A DNA stretch of 63,175 nucleotides, counting the filler, from Trichosphaerium sp. ATCC 40318 (Eukaryota; Protista; Tubulinea): the NCBI GenBank assembly GCA_038496445.1. It is 3 parts of 3 records of this genome, joined end to end, with 100 filler letters (N's around TTAATTAATTAA, not from the genome) between each part and the next. Parts side by side here need not be neighbours in the genome. Positions count along the whole stretch, not along the records: positions 1 to 18,296 come from JALMLS010000601.1; 2 more parts are not named here. One strand, given 5' to 3'. This document shows positions 1-16,448 of the stretch, one piece after another. Positions within the stretch are counted from its first letter, which is position 1; every line of letters begins with the position of its first letter. A program made the translations under genes and the position numbers. Below the pieces are notes generated by a model that was not told the DNA's origin, ran no database searches, and worked only from the letters and a program-made list of their open reading frames with translations.

Positions 1-75
1 GTCTAAGTGCATTCAAACAAAACAAAATTATTAAACCTCAACCAACAACAAACCTCATCTTTAAACAAACAACAA

Positions 76-487
76 ATGAACACAACAATATTATTCGTAT
101 TGGTGACTTTGGCATTGATACCAATTGCCTTGACGACCCAATCTAAAGACTCTGAAGAAATGCCAGACATGCACGAAAAGAGATCAACTGAGGTATGTAG
201 ACACTTGCTACTGTTACATTCAGTATGTTAACTAATGCCCCAATCTAGCAAGGACCATTATTGTGTGGTGAAACATGTGATGCAAATGGATGGTGTCCTC
301 CTGGATGGCGTAAACGTGGTCGTGAAAAGAATGGTCAATGTACGTGAAAATTAAAGGTTGGTAAACTTCTTAGTACTTACCTTTATTAGGTTCAACTGCA
401 TACTGCTACCCTGGATCTCCATTATGCTTTCGCATCAGAAGTGATAAATGGTGTTGCTGGAGTGAAGCTGCTTGCGGAAGCTGCTAA
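76..487 (+). CDS. Secreted Cys-rich prepropeptide, copy 1 (3 exons)
   Basis: Spliced over two GT-AG introns it reads MNTTILFVLVTLALIPIALTTQSKDSEEMPDMHEKR-STEQGPLLCGETCDANGWCPPGWRKRGREKNGQCSTAYCYPGSPLCFRIRSDKWCCWSEAACGSC*: signal peptide, acidic pro-piece, KR site, 10 Cys. Confidence 0.85.
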
Positions 488-1427
488 GATCTTGGCACTC
501 CAATATTAATGTAAAACTAAATAAACCCAAGTTTTACTATTGTTCGTTATCACAGTTAGGTCGCATTTTTTATAGTTGCAATTTTAACAACACATTTTGT
601 GAGCCGGTCTAATAGACAGCGCATATAGCAATGTGTGTGCCTGTAAAACCCAACAAGCGTAGGCAAATACATTAGCCATTTAAAATTGAGCTTTAACAGA
701 AACCAGAAGTGAAACCCTGTTCAATCGCTAAAATAATGTTCAACGTAGAGCTAAAGTAAAGCAGTACAGACTTACATTTTCTTTTTGAGCAAGTGATACA
801 ACATCCAGGCAGGGTGTGGCTTCCAAATGGTACATTTACACAACAGATGTTGATAGAGCGAATGGTATATAGGCAAGTTTAACTTCGCATAGCAGCACAA
901 ATCCAGACTGTAACTGAAGACAATGTAAACACCCTTCTTTTTACGTTTGTCCTTATGCCATTGATTGCTGCCTTGATGGTCCAATCTAATTAGCTCAGTG
1001 AGTGAACTATGGCATAAGAAGTAAGTCAACAATTTTTTGCACAGTTGTGAGCATGACACATTTTTCTGTAGTGAACTAAATGGGTAGACATGGTCACGAA
1101 AAGCGTTACAAGTGTGGACAAACCAAATTGTACACACTAGTATACCGCTAACCTGTATTAATAATCTAATAAAACTGAGAGGTGCTGGAATGAGGTAATT
1201 TTCTGTCAGAGTGGATCACTTTGAACACTAAAAATGTAATTAAACAACTATGGCTGGCTGGTACACCAAGAGCATGCCATAATTCATTAACCGAATAAAT
1301 GTGACTGATATGCACGCTTCATTTTGATATAACGAGCAGTTTAGTAAACTGTAGTCTGATTCTACTTGTTGGCACGTTTATTGATTGCTTACAATGATAT
1401 ATGGTACAACAAGTATGGCTTGCGATC

Positions 1428-1836
1428 TTAGCAGCTTCCACAAGCAGCTTCACTCCAGCAACACCATTTGTCACTTCTGATGCGAAAGCATAATGGAGAT
1501 CCAGGGTAGCAGTATGCAGTTGAACCTAATAAAGGTAAGTACTAAGAAGTCTGTTACTGTTCTTTGATCTTCACGTACATTGACCATTCTTTTCACGACC
1601 GCGTTTACGCCATCCAGGAGGACACCATCCATTTGTATCACATGTTTCGCCACACAATAATGGTCCTTGCTAGAATGGGGCATTAGTTAACATACAATGT
1701 AAAGTAGCAATAGACATACCTCAGTTGATCTCTTTTCGTGCATGTCTGGCATTTCTTCAGAGTCTTTAGATTGGGTCGTCAAGGCAATTGGTATCAATGC
1801 CAAAGTCACCAATACAAATAATATTGTTGTGTTCAT
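1428..1836 (-). CDS. Secreted Cys-rich prepropeptide, copy 2 (inverted duplicate)
   Basis: Reverse complement of copy 1 with the same exon structure. One visible amino-acid change (CDANG to CDTNG); introns are more diverged than exons. Confidence 0.85.
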
Positions 1837-2117
1837 TTGTTGTTTGTTTGAAGATGAGGTTTGTTGTTGGTTGAGGTTTAATAATTTTGTTTTGTTTGAA
1901 TGCACTTAGACATCGATTTTAAGTACTTCTTATTCACTGAACTAAAGTATCATAAACTGTTTGCTGTTTTATCTCATTTCTTTTTCGCTAAATCCAACAC
2001 TTGCTATCCATGGTTGTTAGTCATCAAATATACTGAACCAAACAGCGGTATTCTATCTGGGTTTTGCAAAGTAGACTTACGATCGTGAAAAATATTATTT
2101 ACCATAACACTTCACTC

Positions 2118-4939: not shown

Positions 4940-5357
4940 TAAACAAAGTTGTAGCTAACTGCAGCTTACCAATTTTTTTGTATATCAAGGTAGACTTTTA
5001 ACTTTATTTTGTAAAGACACCATGTTTCGCAGTCACAACCAATCCGAACTTTGCAATTCTACCATGGTATGGTAGTTATCTTGCCAAATTCTTTTACTTT
5101 TAGTGTAAAACCCCAAATAAAAAAGGCGTCATCAAAGTGAGTCAAAGTATTTAGTGTACTGTTCACAACTTCTAACTTGCGCTTATTTCAAAGAAATCAT
5201 GTGGTTGGTCAATATAAAACAACTCATTTGGCTATAATTTATATCCTAAAAGTGGTGTACCAGTTAACACGTCATATGATGCAGAATAGTTTTTGCTAGG
5301 TAGTGTATTATTTATTACACATCTTCAACAGTACATAGAGGATCAATTGTTTATTGT

Positions 5358-6641
5358 TTACCTGTACCTTCTGTGGTTCCTTGTTCGTGTGAATGATGAT
5401 ACCCAAGTATTCCTATTTCGCTTTGCATATGATCTAGATCGGTTATTCGTGTGTCTTTTTCTTGAAGAGCTATATTTTGATCTCCTTGACGGAGAATACA
5501 TTGAGCTTTGATCAAGAACATATGAGGGTGCTGGTGAAGAATGTGCAGGTAATATACAAGGAGTATAACTTGAGCTTGAAGGAGTGTACTTCGGGCTTAT
5601 AGGAGTATACTTTGGGCTTGTAGGAGAATACTTTGGACTTGTAGGAGCATATATTGGGCTTGAAGGAGGATACTTTGGGCTTGTAGGAGAGTACTTTGGA
5701 CTTGCAGGAGCATATATTGGGCTTGAAGGAGGATACTTTGGACTTGTAGGAGAGTACTTTGGACTTGCAGGAGCATATGCTGGTGATGTAAGAGCATATA
5801 TTGGACTTGTAGGTGAATACTTTGGGCTGGTAGGAGAATACTTTGGACTTGCCAGTGATATAGGAGTATACTTTGGGCTTATGGGAGAATATGCCGTTGA
5901 TGTAGGATCATATGCCGGTGATATAGGATCATATCTTGGACTTGAAGGAGGATACTTTGGGCTTGTAGGAGAGTACTTTGGACTTGCAGGAGCATATATT
6001 GGGCTTGAAGGAGGATACTTTGGACTTGTAGGAGAATACTTTGGACTTGCCAGTGATATAGGAGTATACTTTGGGCTTATGGGAGAATATGCCGGTGATG
6101 TACGATCATATGCCGGTGATATAGGAGTATACCTTGGGCTTGTAGGGGAATATTTTGGACTTGCCAGTGATATAGGAGTATACTTTGGGCTTATAGGAGA
6201 ATATGCCGTTGATGTAGGATCATATATTGAGCTTGAAGGAGGATACTTTGGACTTGTAGGAGAGTACTTTGGACTTGCAGGAGCATATGCTGGTGATGTA
6301 GGAGCATATATTGGACTTGTAGGTGAATACTTTGGGCTGGTAGGAGAATACTTTGGACTTGCCGGTGATATAGGAGCATACCTTGGGCTTATAGGAGAAT
6401 ATGTTGGACAATACTCAAGGCTTGAACTACAGTAACCTGTGCTTACAGGGGCATAATTTTGGCTCGAACAATATAGAGATAGTGGCCTTTCATTGTAAGT
6501 ACGTCTTTTCTTTCTACCTCTCTTCCAATGTGGTGATGGGTGTTGATTTTGGCGTCTTGGACGTGTTTTTTTTTTTGGTTTTGTATGAGATCTTGATTTG
6601 TTAGCTCTATTTCTTCGTTTACCCTGATAATTAACACCCAT
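5358..6641 (-). CDS. Intronless stand-alone protein with RNA Pol II CTD-like heptad repeats and Arg/Lys-rich termini (427 aa)
   Basis: About 38 Y-initiated units (YSPTSPK x8, [21 protein letters not shown] and others). In-frame stop upstream at 6720-6722; no Rpb1 catalytic sequence adjacent. Confidence 0.8.
5568..6401. repeat. 21-nt (some 30-nt) coding tandem repeat with higher-order blocks
   Basis: Unit near tactttggacttgtaggagaa; a block of about 130 nt recurs at about 5761 and 6271 (510-nt offset). Confidence 0.95.
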
Positions 6642-7031
6642 GGCTGTTGTTGTGATATGTTTTTTGGTTGCTATTGGTGTTTTTCGTAATTGTTTGTGTT
6701 GTTTTTGTTATTGTGGATGCTATGCTCTCGATGGTGTATTGTAATTATTGTTTGTTAATAAGTGTGATGTACCTTGACGAGTTATGACTATGTCAGCGCT
6801 TAACTTAATAAACAGTTCGTTTAACCTATATCTACGTACCTTACAATAAGTAGTATGTCTACAAACAAACAATCTCCTCGGTTGGGTTTTATCAAGATTC
6901 AAGATTTTTTTTGAGTTTTTCTATTTTAAAACAAACACGTGAGCATTTTTTTACTTGACGCCTGGTGACTGGTGCCTCATGCGCAGATTTTTTGAAGATG
7001 AGATGAAGTAATTCCATGGACTAAAAATAGA

Positions 7032-7742
7032 CTAAGTGAATGCCAAACGGCATTTGTTTATATTGGTTATGACGATGAAACATAAGTCATCAACAAGTTC
7101 TGTATGAGCAAACTTTGTGTTGTGACAAATCAGTTTGACAAATCCATCAACTGTACACACGCGTATAGATTCTATGCTGAAAAGACAACCATCGCTTGAT
7201 TTCTCAGTTTGTTCCACCTCTTTGCATAGCCTGATGTCCTTGTGTATAAACTAAAGCAAAAATCACTTAGTAAAAAAAATTCGTTATTGAGCACATCACG
7301 TGATGCAAAAAACTTTAGGTTCACTGTCACGTGGTTTGTATACAGTAGTTTGTTAACGTACGGCATCAATTTGAGGATATTTCTGTAGTAATTCAACGGT
7401 AGGTTTGACAAGTATGCGTCCAAGCGCAACCCATGTACCACGACACAGTTCAAGCATTTTAGATGCTTGGTAGACGTTATTATTCCATAAATAATTTGTA
7501 GTCTTACCATCTTCATATTTGACGCCGTTTTCCGCTAACAGCGGTTTAATCCATGTTGTAGGTAACGCAACAACAGCACACCAAGTTTTTGAAACCTAAA
7601 TACCGTTAGTCACGTGTGCGTGGTTATTTACACGTGTGCTCATCACTACACATACTGTAGAGCAGTTGTGGCATAGTTGAGGAGAAAGGTTCATGAATAT
7701 GTGTTGAAGGATCTCATTGGGTAGAGCATTTACCGAAGTCAT
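7032..7742 (-). CDS. F-box protein (4 exons)
   Basis: MTSVNALPNEILQHIFMNLSPQLCHNCST|VSKTW matches the F-box consensus; the spliced frame stays open to the stop at 7032. Confidence 0.75.
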
Positions 7743-7993
7743 CAAAAACAAAGCAAAGAGATGTGACGGGTTCAATTGAAGAGATTTTTATAACTTTTTT
7801 ATTCATTGAAAACAACGATTGACATTTTGTTTCAGGCTGTATTTTTTGGTGTTTTGCTCAAAACCAGTTGTATCTTTCTGTGTTGGTTTATAGGAACTAC
7901 CAACATAATATGGACGCTGTTTATTCGCGTGCTATAGCACGTTGTGAGAAAAGCTAATACATGCTACTTGTCGTTGATCAACAGAAAGGGAAA

Positions 7994-9081
7994 CTATTTT
8001 TTTCTATTTGGTAAGTAAGTTCCAATAATTATAGCATGGTTTGTTTCATATGGTTCCAGAGTAATTTGTTCCTTAGGCCTAAGTGGTGTAAGACTATAAG
8101 TTTTCTAAACAGCATTTTTAGTTTATGCTTGTGTGCAACAAAGTAAATTTAAGAACAGAATAGGGTGTACTTGAACTTTTCTGCTCTTAGATCTTTTACA
8201 GTTTGTGAGTAAAACTGCTCAGGTAGCATTGCATCACCAAAGATTTGCCGCTTGGCCTATGGTAGTGAGTGAGTTAAATAACCTTCAGTTACGGCAACAA
8301 AAAGAAGGTTTCATTTGTACATGGACAGAAATAACAAAGCCTCCTCCATCTGAAAGGAAATATTGAGCATTCACACCAATAATATGTGCTTGGTCACGTG
8401 TAGAAATATCAGGGGAGATGCAATCAACTGTATTGACCAGCATTCTAAGTTTGTTATTGAGTAGAAAGCAGTTGTCTTTTATCTACTCTACCTGTATTTA
8501 TGTGGATAACGGGCATCCTCAATGATTGGAACAATATTTGGTCTGTTTTTGGCAACTTCAACCAACTCACGACCACGTTTGTGAGAAACTTCTACAGCAT
8601 AAACAACACCCTTCTAAAATGTATGTAACTAAGTCTGGTATTTGTTACAAAGCAACATACCTCTCCAACAATGTCAGACACATGAGAGACTGTAATACCA
8701 GATGCAGCACCCAAGTAGAGCACTCTTGATCCAGGCGCCATGTGAATATTAATAACACCGCTGATGATTGCTGCTGCAAGCTTTGATTGGAATGGATTCC
8801 ATGTTCTGTATTCTTTTTTCTCATTAGGTTCCTATTAAGAGTTAAGACTGTGTTCCTGGCTTCTGTTGGCTATTAATTGTTTTGAATCGTCGTACTTGGC
8901 TTTTCACTGCTACTGTCACCTCGTCATACACAGAACGGCCTGGTGTTAGAGAACAGGTAAACATACGCTTTTCGCTGTTTATTTCGCCCAAAAATACTCC
9001 TAAAAAACGTTGATGTGGTTCAATTATAAGTTTGTATTCATCATTACGAATATCACTACGCCTACTACCGAATGGAAACAT
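7994..9081 (-). CDS. Fibrillarin-like 2'-O-methyltransferase, divergent, lacking the GAR domain
   Basis: Motifs [60 protein letters not shown] and [16 protein letters not shown]. Confidence 0.9.
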
Positions 9082-9228: not shown

Positions 9229-10570
9229 TTACATGCTCCATGAGACAAAGAGAAGGACCAAAGAGAAGGATACAAGGTTAGTGCTGGAAGAAGTATCTTC
9301 CGTTGGTGCAACAGTCACTTCACTCGGCATCACGGATCCATCACTAGGCGCATCAGGTGCCATTGGAGATTCTGTTGTTGCTGAAGGCGATTCTGTAGTT
9401 GCTGAAGGCGCTTCTGTTGTTGGTGAAGGCGCTTCTGTTGTTGGTGAAGCTTCTGATGGCATACTCGGTTCTGCTGTTGGTATGTCTGTAGGATTGCATC
9501 CAGACTCTGATGGATCACAGTAAAGATTAGGCATCAAAGTACCGTGCCATTTCGCTCTCAACTCAGCAACACTTTGGCTGTCGGCTTTGTTAGTATCCCA
9601 GAAGCTGTATCCAAACTTTTCTCTATGAAAGAATGGACCAACATGGCCACCCCAGAATCCTTCATCAGCCAAAGTATTACACAGACCACGAGACCACTTG
9701 AGCGACCAAGGAATGCCTGATTTTGGACCAGGAAAAATGCCCTCAGCTCCACCACCTGCGGCAACACAAGGAGAATGACCATCAGGTAAGTAAGGCTTTT
9801 GATCGTCAGGATCAGAAGGTACAAAACTTGCTCCACAGTGAGAGTTTGTACTGCTTTGACAAGGACCGTAAACTTCTGCAGAATCTGCTGTGGCAGGGTA
9901 TTTTGTGTCCCACATTGTTGTGAACTTGCGTTCAGCACCCCACTGAGCACGAGCAAACATGCAGTAATCCTTCTTTACTTGTCTGTCAGCACTCGTATAT
10001 CCTAAAAAAAATGTCAGTTTTGTTTTTTCTACTTCCTAAGCTGCATGTAGAAAACACGTGACATGCCAAAGTGGCTTTTTTCACAAATTAATTGGTATAC
10101 TCTTTTTTTTCGTACCTACTAGCGCTCGCACGTGATTTAACGCTATACGATGCCACTCATCGACTTCTGCTTTCGTTGGATTCAAGACGTCGGCAAAAGG
10201 ATTGTGCTTATAGAATACCTCACGTATGCCTCTAATACGATCTACTTGAGGGCAAATAGCCTTCCAGAAGTCCTCTCTGTTCATTTTGGAAGGATTGTAA
10301 ATAGTTCCATCCCATTTAGAGTCTTCCCATGCTTGAGCGTTAATCCAAAGTACACCATCAGGATCATGTGATACTTGGTTGCTGGAAATCGCTTTTGTTT
10401 CGAATGACGACCAATCAGCTGGATCTGGAGTATACTGCTGTAGAAATACTGTTGTCGCACATAAGCATAGAATCAAGCAAGTGACTAGTTGTGGTAAGTT
10501 GTTTGATCCAAAATAATAACAAACCAAGCGCAAATATTAAAAATACAAAAACAACAAGAAAAAATAACAT
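9229..10570 (-). CDS. Secreted, probably GPI-anchored surface protein with an unassigned Trp/His/Cys-rich globular domain and a S/T/P stalk
   Basis: Hydrophobic N-terminus MLFFLVVFVFLIFAL; two long exons joined as ALVG|YTSADRQV; TTEAPS repeats; hydrophobic C-terminus. 5' exon structure uncertain. Confidence 0.7.
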
Positions 10571-11114: not shown

Positions 11115-12030
11115 ATGGCACGCCCAGTTATAATAGATACAGACCCAGGAGGTACGCTAATACCGTTTTTGATATTAATTAACATAAAACCCAGTCGATG
11201 ACGCTCTAGCTATACTCCTAGCGCTTGTTTCGCCTAAAATTAAGGTTCTCGGGGTTACAATCGTACCTGGGAACCTAAGTGACGTTAAACAAATGGCGGA
11301 AAACGCGTTCAAGATCCTAGAAGTAGCAAACAGGCGCCACGTGCCGGTACGGACAAAAAATCAGTCTTTTTTTTTGTATTTGCTCATTGCAAAACAGGTC
11401 TTTGTTGTCGCGTTGAAGCCTTTAGCACGTGCTCATAGACCCAGTGATTATTGTGTATATGGCTATGATGGTATGGGTGACACAGGTACACAAACAAAGA
11501 AATACGCTGGTTTGTTTACTGGTTTTTTCTAGACTATCCTAAAACGGATCGTAAAGTTTCAGATAAATTACGTCCATGAAGTCTACACAATGGGAGGTGC
11601 TGTAGGTTATCCTGGTAATAGAACAACTGCAGCTGAAGTTAACAGTAAGTACAACAATGAACGTTCAAAGCTAATAATTGTGGCAGTATCGATTGATCCT
11701 GAAGCAGCCAAAATATTTTTTAATGCAGGTAATGTTTTTTTCTAAAGTGAGAAGCTTTGAGATTTCTGATTTTAATCTTACCTACAAGTACATGAAACTT
11801 TAAGTAAGGTTGACGATCCTATGTCTACAATGACAATACTAGAACCTACAATGTTCACATCACGTGAGATATGCGTTGATGTTGAGACAAAAGGCGAATT
11901 GACAACAGGTGCAACTATTGGTGATTTTCAGAATGTTTGGAACCGTTCTGCGAATGTTATACTTTACACCAGCGTTGATGAAACAAGGCTAAAAGATGCA
12001 ATGTGTAACGTATTAAGACATGCAAAGTAA
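11115..12030 (+). pseudogene. Inosine-uridine nucleoside hydrolase, internally deleted and frameshifted
   Basis: IIDTDPG|VDDALA, GN, MGGA..GN..AAEVN..DPEAA and VDVETKGELTTGATI are present. The GPLTN and LD segments are missing, there is a frame break near 11570, and HDP reads DDP. Confidence 0.7.
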
Positions 12031-15864: not shown

Positions 15865-16448
15865 ATGGAAACGGCAAAAAAGGTACAGTAGACAGATACC
15901 CGTTTAATATATTTTAAGCTAAGATGTAGTTAAAAACGACAAATTGCTCTCTACTAGACCTTCCAATAGAACTACAACTTGATATCATTGATTCAGACCT
16001 CGAAGTATATTGTAAATGGCCTATATTGTGTTGTAATACAGCAATAACAACAAGGTTTGATCCTGACTTGAACAAACATGGAAAGTGGCAACGTATAAGA
16101 CATAAAAGCAAATCACTTGTTGTATCTCAACAAATACATTGGAATCATGGCCAACAACATGGTGAGTATAAGTCTTGGCATGGTAACGGAATGTTGCGGG
16201 TACAGTGCATGTATGTAAACGGTAAACAAGAAGGAGAGCTAAAGACATGGTATGACAATGGACAATTGTGGAGCACTTGTTTTTATATAAATGGTAAGAC
16301 CGAAGGGGAGAGTAAAGAATGGCATAGAAATGGTCAACTATCTCTTCAATGTAATTATGTCAATGACAAAAGAGATGGAGAGTACAAGAGTTGGTTAAAT
16401 AATGGTCAATTATGTAGGCACTGTTACTTTACGGATGGCAAACCATGA
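15865..16448 (+). CDS. MORN-variant (YwqK-like) repeat protein with F-box-like N-terminus
   Basis: METAKK|LKTTNCSLLDLPIELQLDII followed by about four 24-aa repeats G.YKSW..NGQL..QC.YVNGK. Confidence 0.8.

What the first reader, a model, noticed from the sequence alone, without database searches (positions are those of the whole stretch)
5358..6641. Stand-alone RNA Pol II CTD-like protein with no polymerase body
Seen: an intronless ORF in an intron-dense genome, with about 38 units keeping Y1/P3/S5/P6 and mostly K7. It has very basic termini ([25 protein letters not shown]), no signal peptide and an in-frame stop upstream; the upstream neighbour is an F-box gene, not Rpb1. Known: YSPTSPS heptads define the Rpb1 CTD, K7 variants occur in distal vertebrate repeats, and the CTD is phosphorylated by CDK7/CDK9 to recruit RNA-processing factors. 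Inference: a nuclear, nucleic-acid-binding CTD mimic or decoy, a CTD acting in trans for a CTD-less Rpb1, or a retro- or virus-derived copy. A long repeat array without stops or frameshifts suggests selection.
Basis: partly seen in the sequence, partly recalled or inferred. Interest (0 to 1): 0.8.

Follow-up and report, generated by a model that had tools for sequence, protein, structure and literature searches.

The report
Free-standing Pol II tail-like repeat gene
A single-exon gene in what is probably a marine diatom encodes a very basic, unstructured protein whose centre is 38 copies of the seven-residue repeat otherwise typical of the tail of RNA polymerase II, with no polymerase attached. 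Such orphan "tails" are frequent in sequence databases, but I found no study of them.

Summary
ORF 5358-6641 (minus strand, 427 aa) has 38 CTD-type units: 34 heptads and 4 decamers. Y1 and S5 are invariant, P3 is 32/34 and P6 30/34. K7 is 17/34; S2 is only 15/34. The termini are strongly basic, there is no signal peptide, and an in-frame stop lies upstream. Pfam PF05001 matches at E=1.5e-21.

No Rpb1 body lies anywhere in the 18.3-kb piece. The upstream neighbours are a complete small F-box gene and a fibrillarin-like gene.

Codons within the array are nearly uniform, so it was built by recent local amplification, unlike two genuine Rpb1 CTDs used as controls. Variation is still coding-like. 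At positions 1, 3, 5 and 6 there are 29 synonymous and 6 non-synonymous variants; at positions 2, 4 and 7 there are 5 and 53. pN/pS between internal duplicates is 0.48 in this frame.

An exhaustive search found no orthologue with these termini, but 85 of the best 150 hits lack an Rpb1 body. The closest non-Rpb1 relative is a Chaetoceros tenuissimus protein with heptads plus RRM, KOW and TPR domains.

Most likely this is a real, young, lineage-restricted nuclear protein acting as a CTD-like Ser-Pro platform. That function is inferred. I found no sign of a retrocopy or a viral origin. The idea of a CTD acting in trans could not be tested.

The parts
5358..6641 (-). Whole ORF, 427 aa plus stop, single exon
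   Evidence: Pfam PF05001 E=1.5e-21. AlphaFold2 on the single sequence gives mean pLDDT 40 and no secondary structure.
6474..6641 (-). Basic N-terminal region, residues 1-56. K+R is 21/56 and pI is 12. It contains KRGRKKRR (residues 40-47, nt 6501-6524), which looks like a nuclear localisation signal.
   Evidence: No Pfam hit. The nuclear localisation reading is inference from the sequence.
6402..6473 (-). Degenerate units, residues 57-80 ([24 protein letters not shown]). With residues 49-56 just upstream they carry the motif [10 protein letters not shown] (residues 49-58, nt 6468-6497).
   Evidence: Among 388 fetched proteins the motif is shared only with the Chaetoceros tenuissimus protein P0264.
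5568..6401 (-). Array of 38 CTD-type units, residues 81-358: 34 heptads and 4 decamers. It has higher-order repeats of 63, 114 and 198 nt.
   Evidence: Tandem Repeats Finder; the repeat finder; unit parsing and codon tables; block duplicates.
5361..5567 (-). C-terminal tail, residues 359-427. It is rich in Ser, Arg and Lys ([20 protein letters not shown]...), with K+R 16/69 and pI 11.7.
   Evidence: No Pfam hit.
6708..6710 (-). In-frame TAA upstream of the start codon
5311..5355 (-). Two AATAAA motifs (5350-5355 and 5311-5316) just after the stop codon. No poly(A) tract follows.
   Evidence: Read from the sequence. A role as polyadenylation signals is inferred.
7032..7742 (-). Upstream neighbour: a small F-box gene with its own ATG and TAG. 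My model has two introns of 59 nt (GTATGT...CTAAC...AG) and about 108 nt. It is a separate gene and is listed as context.
   Evidence: Pfam F-box-like E=1.4e-7 on 7599-7787. Splice signals were read. The exon model is mine and was not joined for any search.

Best explanation
This is a real, independently transcribed, single-exon gene of a marine protist, probably a diatom close to Chaetoceros. It encodes a fully disordered, strongly basic protein and is not part of RPB1.

Shown. The centre of the protein is a Pol II CTD-type array that was built recently by tandem amplification of a 21-nt unit and of larger blocks. Selection keeps Tyr1, Pro3, Ser5 and Pro6, while positions 2, 4 and 7 drift.

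Inferred. The basic clusters at both ends would take the protein into the nucleus. There the 53 Ser-Pro sites and 38 array tyrosines would form a free, multivalent CTD-like platform. Proline-directed CTD kinases and phosphatases would modify it mainly at the Ser5-Pro6 type of site. CTD-reading modules could bind it, or it could co-partition with Pol II and RNA-processing assemblies.

The lysines at position 7 and the basic ends add affinity for nucleic acid, which phosphorylation would weaken.
For: Identity of the repeat.

Separate gene. It has its own ATG in a good context, an upstream in-frame stop, a stop codon followed by AATAAA, and a complete F-box gene with its own stop 390 nt upstream. 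No Rpb1 domain is found in the window using full-length Rpb1 queries.

Coding constraint.
- Against the commonest unit, heptad positions 1, 3, 5 and 6 carry 29 synonymous and 6 non-synonymous variants. Positions 2, 4 and 7 carry 5 and 53.
- Ser5 is invariant, yet it is encoded by both AGY and TCA codons.
- Older internal duplicates have pN/pS of 0.25-0.35. Pooled pN/pS is 0.48 in this frame and about 1 in four of the other five frames.
- All length changes in the array are in frame.
- The flanks are open beyond chance.

Recent amplification. Codons are nearly uniform (CCT 30/32, CCA 26/30, AAG 17/17), whereas two genuine Rpb1 CTD loci have mixed codons. Blocks of 191 nt are 96% identical.

Disorder and charge.

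Link to the nucleus and transcription. The closest non-Rpb1 relative, C. tenuissimus P0264, joins the same kind of array to RRM, C2H2, Spt5-type KOW and TPR domains, and it shares a non-heptad motif with this ORF.

Taxon.
- The window has GC 37.8%, against 39.3% at the Chaetoceros locus.
- The only relatives found for the neighbouring F-box-like/MORN_2 ORF are two MMETSP transcripts and one JGI protein.
- A Chaetoceros genome bin was reported as enriched in PF05001 (bioRxiv 10.1101/2022.05.19.492674).
Against: - There are no expression or protein data.
- No orthologue with the same termini appears among 1.84 billion representatives. Only the best 150 hits could be inspected.
- No relative was found in the viral or metagenome contig collections.
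- The array is young. The youngest duplicate pair shows 6 non-synonymous changes against 1 synonymous, so constraint is modest and could be relaxed now.
- The block comparisons overlap and are not independent.
- The antisense frame, which shares third codon positions with this ORF, shows a similar ratio of 0.54.
- Ser2 is kept in only 44% of units and Ser7 in 3%, so much of the canonical CTD code cannot be written on this protein.
- Low-complexity similarity does not prove shared partners.
- The nuclear localisation signal and every interaction are inferred, not shown.
Confidence: 0.45

Rival explanations
1. A phosphorylation-switchable polycation that binds DNA or RNA directly, as the SPKK/SPXX tails of sperm histones do. 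On this reading it is a chromatin or RNA-packaging protein with no link to the Pol II machinery. The likeness to the CTD would then be convergent or merely inherited.
For: Net charge is about +55 and pI is 10.2. There are 53 Ser-Pro sites, most followed by K, R or a small residue, and both ends are basic. K7 dominance is not seen in any other hit: the highest is 7 of 25 heptads. That SPKK motifs bind the DNA minor groove is my own background knowledge.
Against: The motif here is S-P-K-Y, with a single basic residue, so it is not SPKK. Tyr1 and Pro3 are conserved as strictly as the Ser-Pro pair, and a pure SPXX binder would not need them. The closest relative pairs such arrays with RRM and KOW domains.
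Confidence: 0.2
2. Not a functional gene. It would be a recently expanded coding-like minisatellite, or a decaying partial duplicate of a heptad-bearing gene (RPB1 or a Chaetoceros-type heptad-RRM-KOW-TPR gene). On this reading it stays open only because it is young.
For: Codon uniformity and 96%-identical blocks show very recent expansion. Several other frames of the array are also open. The youngest duplicates have more non-synonymous than synonymous changes. No orthologue was found.
Against: About 150 non-repeat codons on the two sides are open, stop-free in only 0.5% and 1.1% of shuffles. The ORF has an ATG in a good context, AATAAA motifs after the stop, position-specific constraint and Ser5 kept across two codon families. 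pN/pS is 0.48 in the reading frame and about 1 in four of the five other frames; the antisense frame that shares third positions gives 0.54.
Confidence: 0.15
3. It is the last exon of a larger gene, for example by read-through or alternative splicing from the F-box gene just upstream. This would parallel the fusions of such arrays to MATH, FHA, vWA or RRM-KOW-TPR domains seen elsewhere.
For: It lies on the same strand as the F-box gene, 390 nt downstream. AG dinucleotides that could serve as acceptors lie just upstream of and inside the 5' end of the ORF. Of the 85 best-150 hits that lack an Rpb1 body, 46 carry at least 150 aa of other sequence on one side of the array.
Against: My exon model of the F-box gene ends in its own TAG. 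The ORF has an in-frame stop upstream and its own ATG. No ORF upstream resembles any partner domain of the fusion proteins. One F-box-like motif in P0047 matched only at E=0.56, and Pfam finds no F-box in P0047.
Confidence: 0.1
4. A secreted structural, adhesive, wall or biosilica-associated protein rich in Tyr, Lys, Ser and Pro, comparable to extensins, mussel foot proteins or diatom silaffins and cingulins.
For: Its composition (21% S, 21% P, 12% Y, 8% K) resembles such proteins. The comparison with those families is from my own background knowledge.
Against: There is no signal peptide: the N-terminus is strongly hydrophilic and basic, with GRAVY -2.4. I saw no upstream exon that could encode a signal peptide in 6642-7031. 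Strict Y-x-P-x-S-P periodicity is not a feature of those families.
Confidence: 0.05
5. A CTD supplied in trans to an Rpb1 that has lost its own CTD; or a retrocopy or virus-derived copy of a CTD.
For: Only that the array stands alone.
Against: - There is no poly(A) tract, no Rpb1 linker and no Rpb1-like tail.
- No viral relative was found.
- The codon-uniform, recently amplified array differs from the mixed-codon CTDs of the two real Rpb1 loci examined.
- An essential trans-CTD would be expected to be old and conserved, yet no orthologue was found.
- To my knowledge, diatoms and other stramenopiles have Rpb1 with its own CTD. The Heterosigma akashiwo hit P0261 is consistent with this: the array sits at the C-terminal end of a 1601-aa protein, though I did not check its domains individually.
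Confidence: 0.05

Closest known systems
[quoted passage not shown]
   Same: Tandem heptads with Tyr1, Pro3, Ser5 and Pro6 kept, and variation concentrated at positions 2, 4 and 7. K7 units also occur in distal metazoan and Plasmodium CTDs (PMC4362643). The domain is disordered.
   Different: The array is not attached to a polymerase body. Ser2 is lost in most units and Ser7 is almost absent. K/R at position 7 is in the majority. The termini are polybasic, rather than an Rpb1 linker and Rpb1-like tail. Codons are uniform, which indicates recent amplification, whereas two genuine CTD loci have mixed codons.
Chaetoceros tenuissimus GFH46414.1 (P0264, annotated 'RPB1') and its 1067-aa neighbouring paralogue
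   Same: Both are non-Rpb1, single-exon genes with a CTD-type array, 52-54% identical over the array. P0264 shares the motif Y[EN][NE]RPLSL(P)YC. The genomic GC content is similar.
   Different: The Chaetoceros proteins are 1355 and 1067 aa. Both carry Spt5-type KOW and TPR domains, and P0264 also has RRM and C2H2 domains. Their units are mostly A7 rather than K7, and they lack polybasic termini. The window ORF is the array alone.
Other database proteins with PF05001 arrays outside Rpb1, for example the Mytilus MATH-domain proteins P0034 and P0087, and fusions to FHA (P0049) or vWA (P0078)
   Same: A heptad array used as a portable module. Of the best 150 hits, 85 lack an Rpb1 body.
   Different: Most of these are fused to folded domains and have S7 or A7 units. 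None is K7-dominant. I found no paper that characterises any of them.
Short CTD mimics: the Nrd1-interacting motifs of Trf4 and Sen1 (PMC4186968, PMC7110113)
   Same: These are non-polymerase sequences that occupy a CTD-binding site. They are a precedent for the proposed mode of action.
   Different: They are single short motifs inside large enzymes, not a 38-unit array, and they are not homologous to this ORF.
C-terminal repeats of Spt5 (PMC4066402) and SPKK/SPXX tails of sperm histones (the latter from my own background knowledge)
   Same: Repetitive, phosphorylated, disordered platforms, or basic Ser-Pro tails whose nucleic-acid binding is tuned by phosphorylation.
   Different: They have different repeat units. 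No sequence relationship with this ORF was detected.

Membership tests
Rpb1 C-terminal domain (as part of RNA polymerase II) | Tandem heptads matching the consensus YSPTSPS | tested here: met
   PF05001 E=1.5e-21, 75.8 bits against a cut-off of 20.3. Y1 is 100%, P3 94%, S5 100% and P6 88%, but S2 is 44%, T4 50% and S7 3%.
Rpb1 C-terminal domain (as part of RNA polymerase II) | Continuous with the Rpb1 catalytic body (domains 1-7) in one polypeptide | tested here: not met
   An in-frame stop lies upstream and the ORF has its own ATG. tblastn with 270 proteins, including full-length Rpb1s, finds nothing outside the ORF in 18.3 kb. A more distant exon beyond the piece cannot be excluded.
Rpb1 C-terminal domain (as part of RNA polymerase II) | Old array with diversified synonymous codons | tested here: not met
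   Codons in the window array are nearly uniform, while they are mixed in the two Rpb1 loci L005 and L006. With only two control loci, this is a tendency rather than a strict criterion.
Rpb1 C-terminal domain (as part of RNA polymerase II) | Phosphorylation by CDK7/CDK9 and binding by CTD-interacting domains | not testable with these tools
   Needs biochemistry or phosphoproteomics.
Non-Rpb1 proteins carrying PF05001 arrays (a database class, uncharacterised) | PF05001 array in a protein without Rpb1 domains | tested here: met
   Comparable proteins.
Chaetoceros heptad-RRM-KOW-TPR family (P0264 type) | Heptad array together with KOW7_SPT5 and TPR domains | tested here: not met
   There is no Pfam hit in the termini, and no KOW, TPR or RRM match anywhere in the window. 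Only the array and a 10-residue motif are shared.
SPKK/SPXX basic nuclear proteins | Repeated S-P-basic-basic tetrapeptides | tested here: not met
   The units read S-P-K-Y, with one basic residue followed by Tyr.
Secreted Tyr/Lys/Pro-rich structural proteins (extensin, adhesive or silaffin-like) | N-terminal signal peptide | tested here: not met
   The first 30 residues have GRAVY -2.4 and are Lys/Arg-rich. No dedicated signal-peptide predictor was available.
Processed retrocopy | Poly(A) remnant, and flanking sequence of the parent mRNA | tested here: not met
   No poly(A) tract follows the stop, and there is no Rpb1 linker or tail. Target-site duplications were not searched for.
SR proteins | RRM plus a long run of Arg-Ser dipeptides | tested here: not met
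   There is no RRM. The tail has only a few RS/SR dipeptides.

The most novel reading that the evidence does not exclude
A natural 'free CTD': an autonomous, nuclear, K7-rich CTD-like polypeptide that enters Pol II and RNA-processing assemblies, or titrates CTD kinases, phosphatases and reader proteins. It would tune transcription in trans. It would also be one visible member of a large, unstudied class of portable CTD-type arrays in protists and animals.
Probability: 0.15. Interest if true: 0.75.

Novelty: new variant of a known kind. Interest (0 to 1): 0.45.

Why it matters
The CTD heptad array is usually treated as a hallmark found only on RNA polymerase II. This locus shows a clean case of the array as a gene of its own. 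It has position-specific constraint on exactly the residues that matter in the real CTD (Tyr1, Pro3, Ser5, Pro6).

The searches also show that more than half of the best database matches are not polymerases. If such proteins engage the CTD machinery, they would add a layer of transcription control by mimicry or competition. They would also be natural experiments on which parts of the CTD code are needed.

If they do not engage that machinery, they show how easily a 21-nt coding minisatellite spreads and persists. Either way, automatic 'RPB1' or 'RPB1-like' names on such proteins are misleading.

Tried and rejected
- An exact-product look-up of the ORF found no record.
- Scans for relatives in viral contigs and in metagenome contigs found none. 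I did not use the second metagenome scan that was allowed.
- Rfam and tRNA scans of the window found nothing.
- Inverted or direct repeats flanking the ORF, which would suggest a mobile element, were not found.
- BLASTP of the two termini against the 120 word-search hits gave only heptad-type matches.
- Hits whose alignment ran into the C-terminal tail (for example P0326) turned out to have non-basic tails, so the similarity is low-complexity only.
- The idea that P0047 shows an F-box plus CTD-like architecture was rejected. Pfam finds no F-box in it and tblastn gives only E=0.56.
- Identifying the organism from the bacterial-type neighbour gene failed. Its relatives are bacterial, or come from unnamed metagenome and transcriptome contigs.
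- The plus-strand ORF 5584-6435 was rejected as a gene. It has no Pfam hit and does not extend beyond the array, and its coding-like signal comes from third positions shared with the minus-strand ORF.
- Literature searches for stand-alone multi-heptad CTD-like proteins found only short CTD mimics and work on the evolution of the CTD itself. One search was a malformed query and one search returned nothing.
- Steps left out. The spliced models of the neighbouring genes (F-box, fibrillarin-like, bacterial-type, nucleoside hydrolase) were searched exon by exon, by reference. The joined proteins were not built or searched. This, together with the length window of the word search, kept me from using those genes to name the organism.
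- A termini-only exhaustive search was not run.
Full report
**1. What is there**

The minus strand carries an uninterrupted ORF at 5358-6641 (427 aa). It starts with ATG in the context cagccATGG. An in-frame TAA lies 22 codons upstream, at 6708-6710. The ORF ends in TAA, followed within 50 nt by two AATAAA motifs and no poly(A) tract.

The protein has four parts:
- A basic N-terminus, residues 1-56, with K+R 21/56. It includes KRGRKKRR.
- Four degenerate units, residues 57-80.
- An array of 38 units, residues 81-358.
- A tail rich in Ser, Arg and Lys, residues 359-427, with K+R 16/69.

Overall there are 62 K+R against 7 D+E, pI is 10.2, and there are 53 Ser-Pro sites. The first 30 residues are strongly hydrophilic, so there is no signal peptide. 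AlphaFold2 on the single sequence gives mean pLDDT 40 and no secondary structure. This is consistent with complete disorder, although a single-sequence model is weak evidence.

**2. The repeat**

Thirty-four units are heptads. Four are decamers (YxPIS[PL]ASPK), each a heptad followed by a unit shortened by 12 nt in frame. Heptad composition:

| Position | Residue | Count |
|---|---|---|
| 1 | Tyr | 34/34 |
| 3 | Pro | 32/34 |
| 5 | Ser | 34/34 |
| 6 | Pro | 30/34 |
| 7 | Lys (plus 3 Arg) | 17/34 |
| 2 | Ser | 15/34 |
| 4 | Thr | 17/34 |

Pfam's Rpb1 C-terminal repeat model matches at E=1.5e-21. The best solved-structure match is the distal, K7-bearing half of the mammalian RPB1 CTD. One addition: Ser2, a key mark of the canonical CTD, is mostly lost.

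**3. Not part of RPB1 in this locus**

I ran tblastn against the window with 120 word-search hits and with the 150 best hits of the exhaustive search. Many are Rpb1 fragments covering domains 5-7, and several are full-length Rpb1s. No hit falls outside the ORF.

Upstream on the same strand lie these genes:
- A small F-box gene at 7032-7742. Pfam F-box-like gives E=1.4e-7. It has its own ATG and TAG and, in my reading, two introns.
- A fibrillarin-like gene at 7994-9081, with four introns of 47-65 nt.
- A bacterial-type gene at 9229-10570, with a 108-nt intron.

Downstream, a multi-exon membrane-protein-like gene on the plus strand converges on the ORF (it has no Pfam hit). A nucleoside hydrolase gene (11188-12027) and an ORF with an F-box-like motif plus MORN_2 repeats (15930-16445) follow further upstream.

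They were searched exon by exon, by reference.

**4. Coding or just a minisatellite?**

On its own this is weak. Several other frames of the array are open too, including a 283-aa ORF on the plus strand. Four other lines of evidence do point to coding constraint in the CTD-like frame.

- *Open flanks.* The roughly 150 non-repeat codons flanking the array are open. Composition-preserving shuffles of the two flanks are stop-free in only 0.5% and 1.1% of trials.
- *Position-specific variation.* Against the commonest unit, positions 1, 3, 5 and 6 show 29 synonymous and 6 non-synonymous variants. Positions 2, 4 and 7 show 5 and 53.
- *Ser5 across codon families.* Ser5 is invariant, although it is encoded by AGC, AGT and also TCA. 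Moving between those codon families takes two or three base changes.
- *Internal duplicates.* Older duplicated blocks have pS of 0.12-0.24 and pN of 0.04-0.075. Pooled over five block pairs, pN/pS is 0.48 in this frame, 0.54 in the antisense frame that shares its third positions, and 0.94-1.16 in the other four frames.

Caveats: the block pairs overlap, numbers are small, and the youngest pair (96% identical) shows 6 non-synonymous changes against 1 synonymous. The antisense ORF has no Pfam match and does not extend beyond the array, so the minus-strand frame is the coding one.

**5. Age and origin of the array**

Codons are nearly uniform: TAT 29/34, CCT 30/32 at position 3, CCA 26/30 at position 6, and AAG 17/17 at position 7. 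Tandem Repeats Finder and the repeat finder show higher-order periods of 63, 114 and 198 nt, and a 191-nt block repeated at 96% identity.

Two genuine Rpb1 genes with K7-rich CTDs, fetched as controls (L005, L006), use mixed synonymous codons at every position. So the window's array was built, or homogenised, recently by local amplification. It is not a copy of a mature CTD.

I found no signs of a retrocopy, no flanking repeats, and no relative in the viral contig collection.

**6. Relatives**

The word search, which is limited to proteins of 235-747 aa, returned Rpb1 fragments. It also returned many proteins with PF05001 but no Rpb1 domain. These include fusions to MATH (Mytilus), FHA and vWA domains.

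The claim of an orphan gene rests on the absence of relatives, and the word search has a length window. I therefore used the one exhaustive HMMER job on the full ORF.
- 1412 representatives match at E<=1e-3.
- None of the best 150 aligns over the basic termini.
- None is K7-dominant.
- 65 of the best 150 have a recognisable Rpb1 body and 85 do not.
- 46 of those 85 carry at least 150 aa of other sequence on one side of the array.

The closest non-Rpb1 relative is Chaetoceros tenuissimus GFH46414.1, annotated 'RPB1'. It is a 1355-aa single-exon protein with a heptad array followed by RRM, C2H2, Spt5-type KOW and TPR domains. A 1067-aa paralogue lies 3.5 kb away.

Alone among the 388 proteins fetched, it shares with the window ORF a non-heptad motif: [10 protein letters not shown] here, YENRPLSLPYC there. 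The motif was noticed after the fact, so it is suggestive rather than proof.

**7. Organism**

The organism was not identified with certainty. The following points suggest a diatom near Chaetoceros:
- The shared motif described above.
- GC content of 37.8%, against 39.3% at the Chaetoceros locus.
- Short introns with GTATGT or GTACG donors and CTAAC/CTGAC-type branch sites.
- The only relatives found for the neighbouring F-box-like/MORN_2 ORF are two MMETSP transcripts and one JGI protein.
- A report that one Chaetoceros genome bin is enriched in PF05001 (bioRxiv 10.1101/2022.05.19.492674).

I put this at about even odds.

**8. How it most likely works**

*Shown.* It is a separate, constrained, disordered, polybasic protein-coding ORF with a CTD-type array in which Tyr1, Pro3, Ser5 and Pro6 are kept.

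*Inferred.* The basic clusters would drive nuclear import. The Ser5-Pro6 type of site would be phosphorylated by proline-directed CTD kinases and removed by CTD phosphatases. The array would engage CTD-reading modules, or co-partition with Pol II and RNA-processing assemblies. K7 and the basic ends would add nucleic-acid affinity that phosphorylation would offset.

Support for a transcription or RNA context comes only by association: the Chaetoceros relative joins the same kind of array to RRM and Spt5-type KOW domains. Known precedents for CTD mimicry are single short motifs in Trf4 and Sen1 (PMC4186968, PMC7110113).

K7 units are rare outside animals and Plasmodium in sampled Rpb1s (PMC4362643). 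My searches nevertheless turned up Rpb1 fragments from unnamed eukaryotes whose CTDs carry many K7 or R7 units, a majority in two of them.

The rival explanations are weighed in their own section of this report. They are a direct nucleic-acid binder, a young non-functional array, a terminal exon of a larger gene, a secreted structural protein, and a trans-CTD or a retro- or virus-derived copy.

**9. Novelty and score**

The repeat module is known. Its occurrence outside Rpb1 is visible in databases, but I found no paper describing it. This ORF is a new variant: the array alone, K7-rich, with polybasic ends, and recently amplified.

It is a real and tidy example rather than a categorically new system, and its function is unproven. 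I score interest at 0.45. No step had to be referred, and nothing in this window concerns a virus or a toxin of animals, people or crops.

Noticed in passing
window 1-1911: A long inverted repeat at the very start of the piece. The arms are about 1-491 and 1424-1911, 96-99% complementary, around a loop of about 930 nt. It could be a foldback element or an assembly artefact.
   Followed up: partly
window 7994-9081 (-): A fibrillarin-like gene. Three exons match Pfam PF01269. It has four introns of 47-65 nt and appears to lack the usual N-terminal Gly/Arg-rich domain, so it is probably a divergent paralogue.
   Followed up: partly
window 9229-10570 (-): A bacterial-type gene in a eukaryotic setting. 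It has a 108-nt intron, a first exon that looks like a signal peptide, a 21-nt tandem repeat (9368-9449) encoding TTE[AS]PS, and a hydrophobic C-terminus. It is 63-69% identical to bacterial proteins, one of which sits in a type VI secretion cluster. It looks like a horizontal transfer. A relative also lies on gene-dense eukaryote-like contigs.
   Followed up: partly
window 15930-16445 (+): An ORF with an F-box-like motif plus MORN_2 repeats and no start codon of its own, so an upstream exon is expected. Its only relatives in 5.8 billion proteins are two MMETSP transcripts (50% and 38% identity) and one JGI protein.
   Followed up: partly
window 5584-6435 (+): A 283-aa antisense ORF (units YFGLVGE) spans only the array. 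It is open, and shows a coding-like pN/pS of 0.54, because its third codon positions coincide with those of the minus-strand ORF. It has no Pfam hit.
   Followed up: yes
L007 10001-14068 and 17563-20766 (Chaetoceros tenuissimus, BLLK01000022.1): Two neighbouring single-exon paralogues combine CTD-type heptads with Spt5-type KOW and TPR domains, and one also has RRM and C2H2 domains. One is named 'RPB1' in the public record, which is misleading.
   Followed up: partly
hits (for example P0258, P0265, P0266): Heptad arrays appear in unexpected partners. Examples are an angiotensin-converting-enzyme-like protein of the ostracod Cyprideis, a 'mucin-like' protein of Priapulus, and a helicase with a degenerate PTSPK array. 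Some may be gene-model fusions.
   Followed up: no
L005 and L006 (metagenome and Logan contigs): Genuine Rpb1 genes of unnamed eukaryotes whose CTDs carry frequent K7 or R7 units. So K7-rich CTDs are not confined to animals and Plasmodium.
   Followed up: partly
window 11188-12027 (+): An inosine-uridine nucleoside hydrolase gene in three exon-like ORFs (Pfam PF01156).
   Followed up: no
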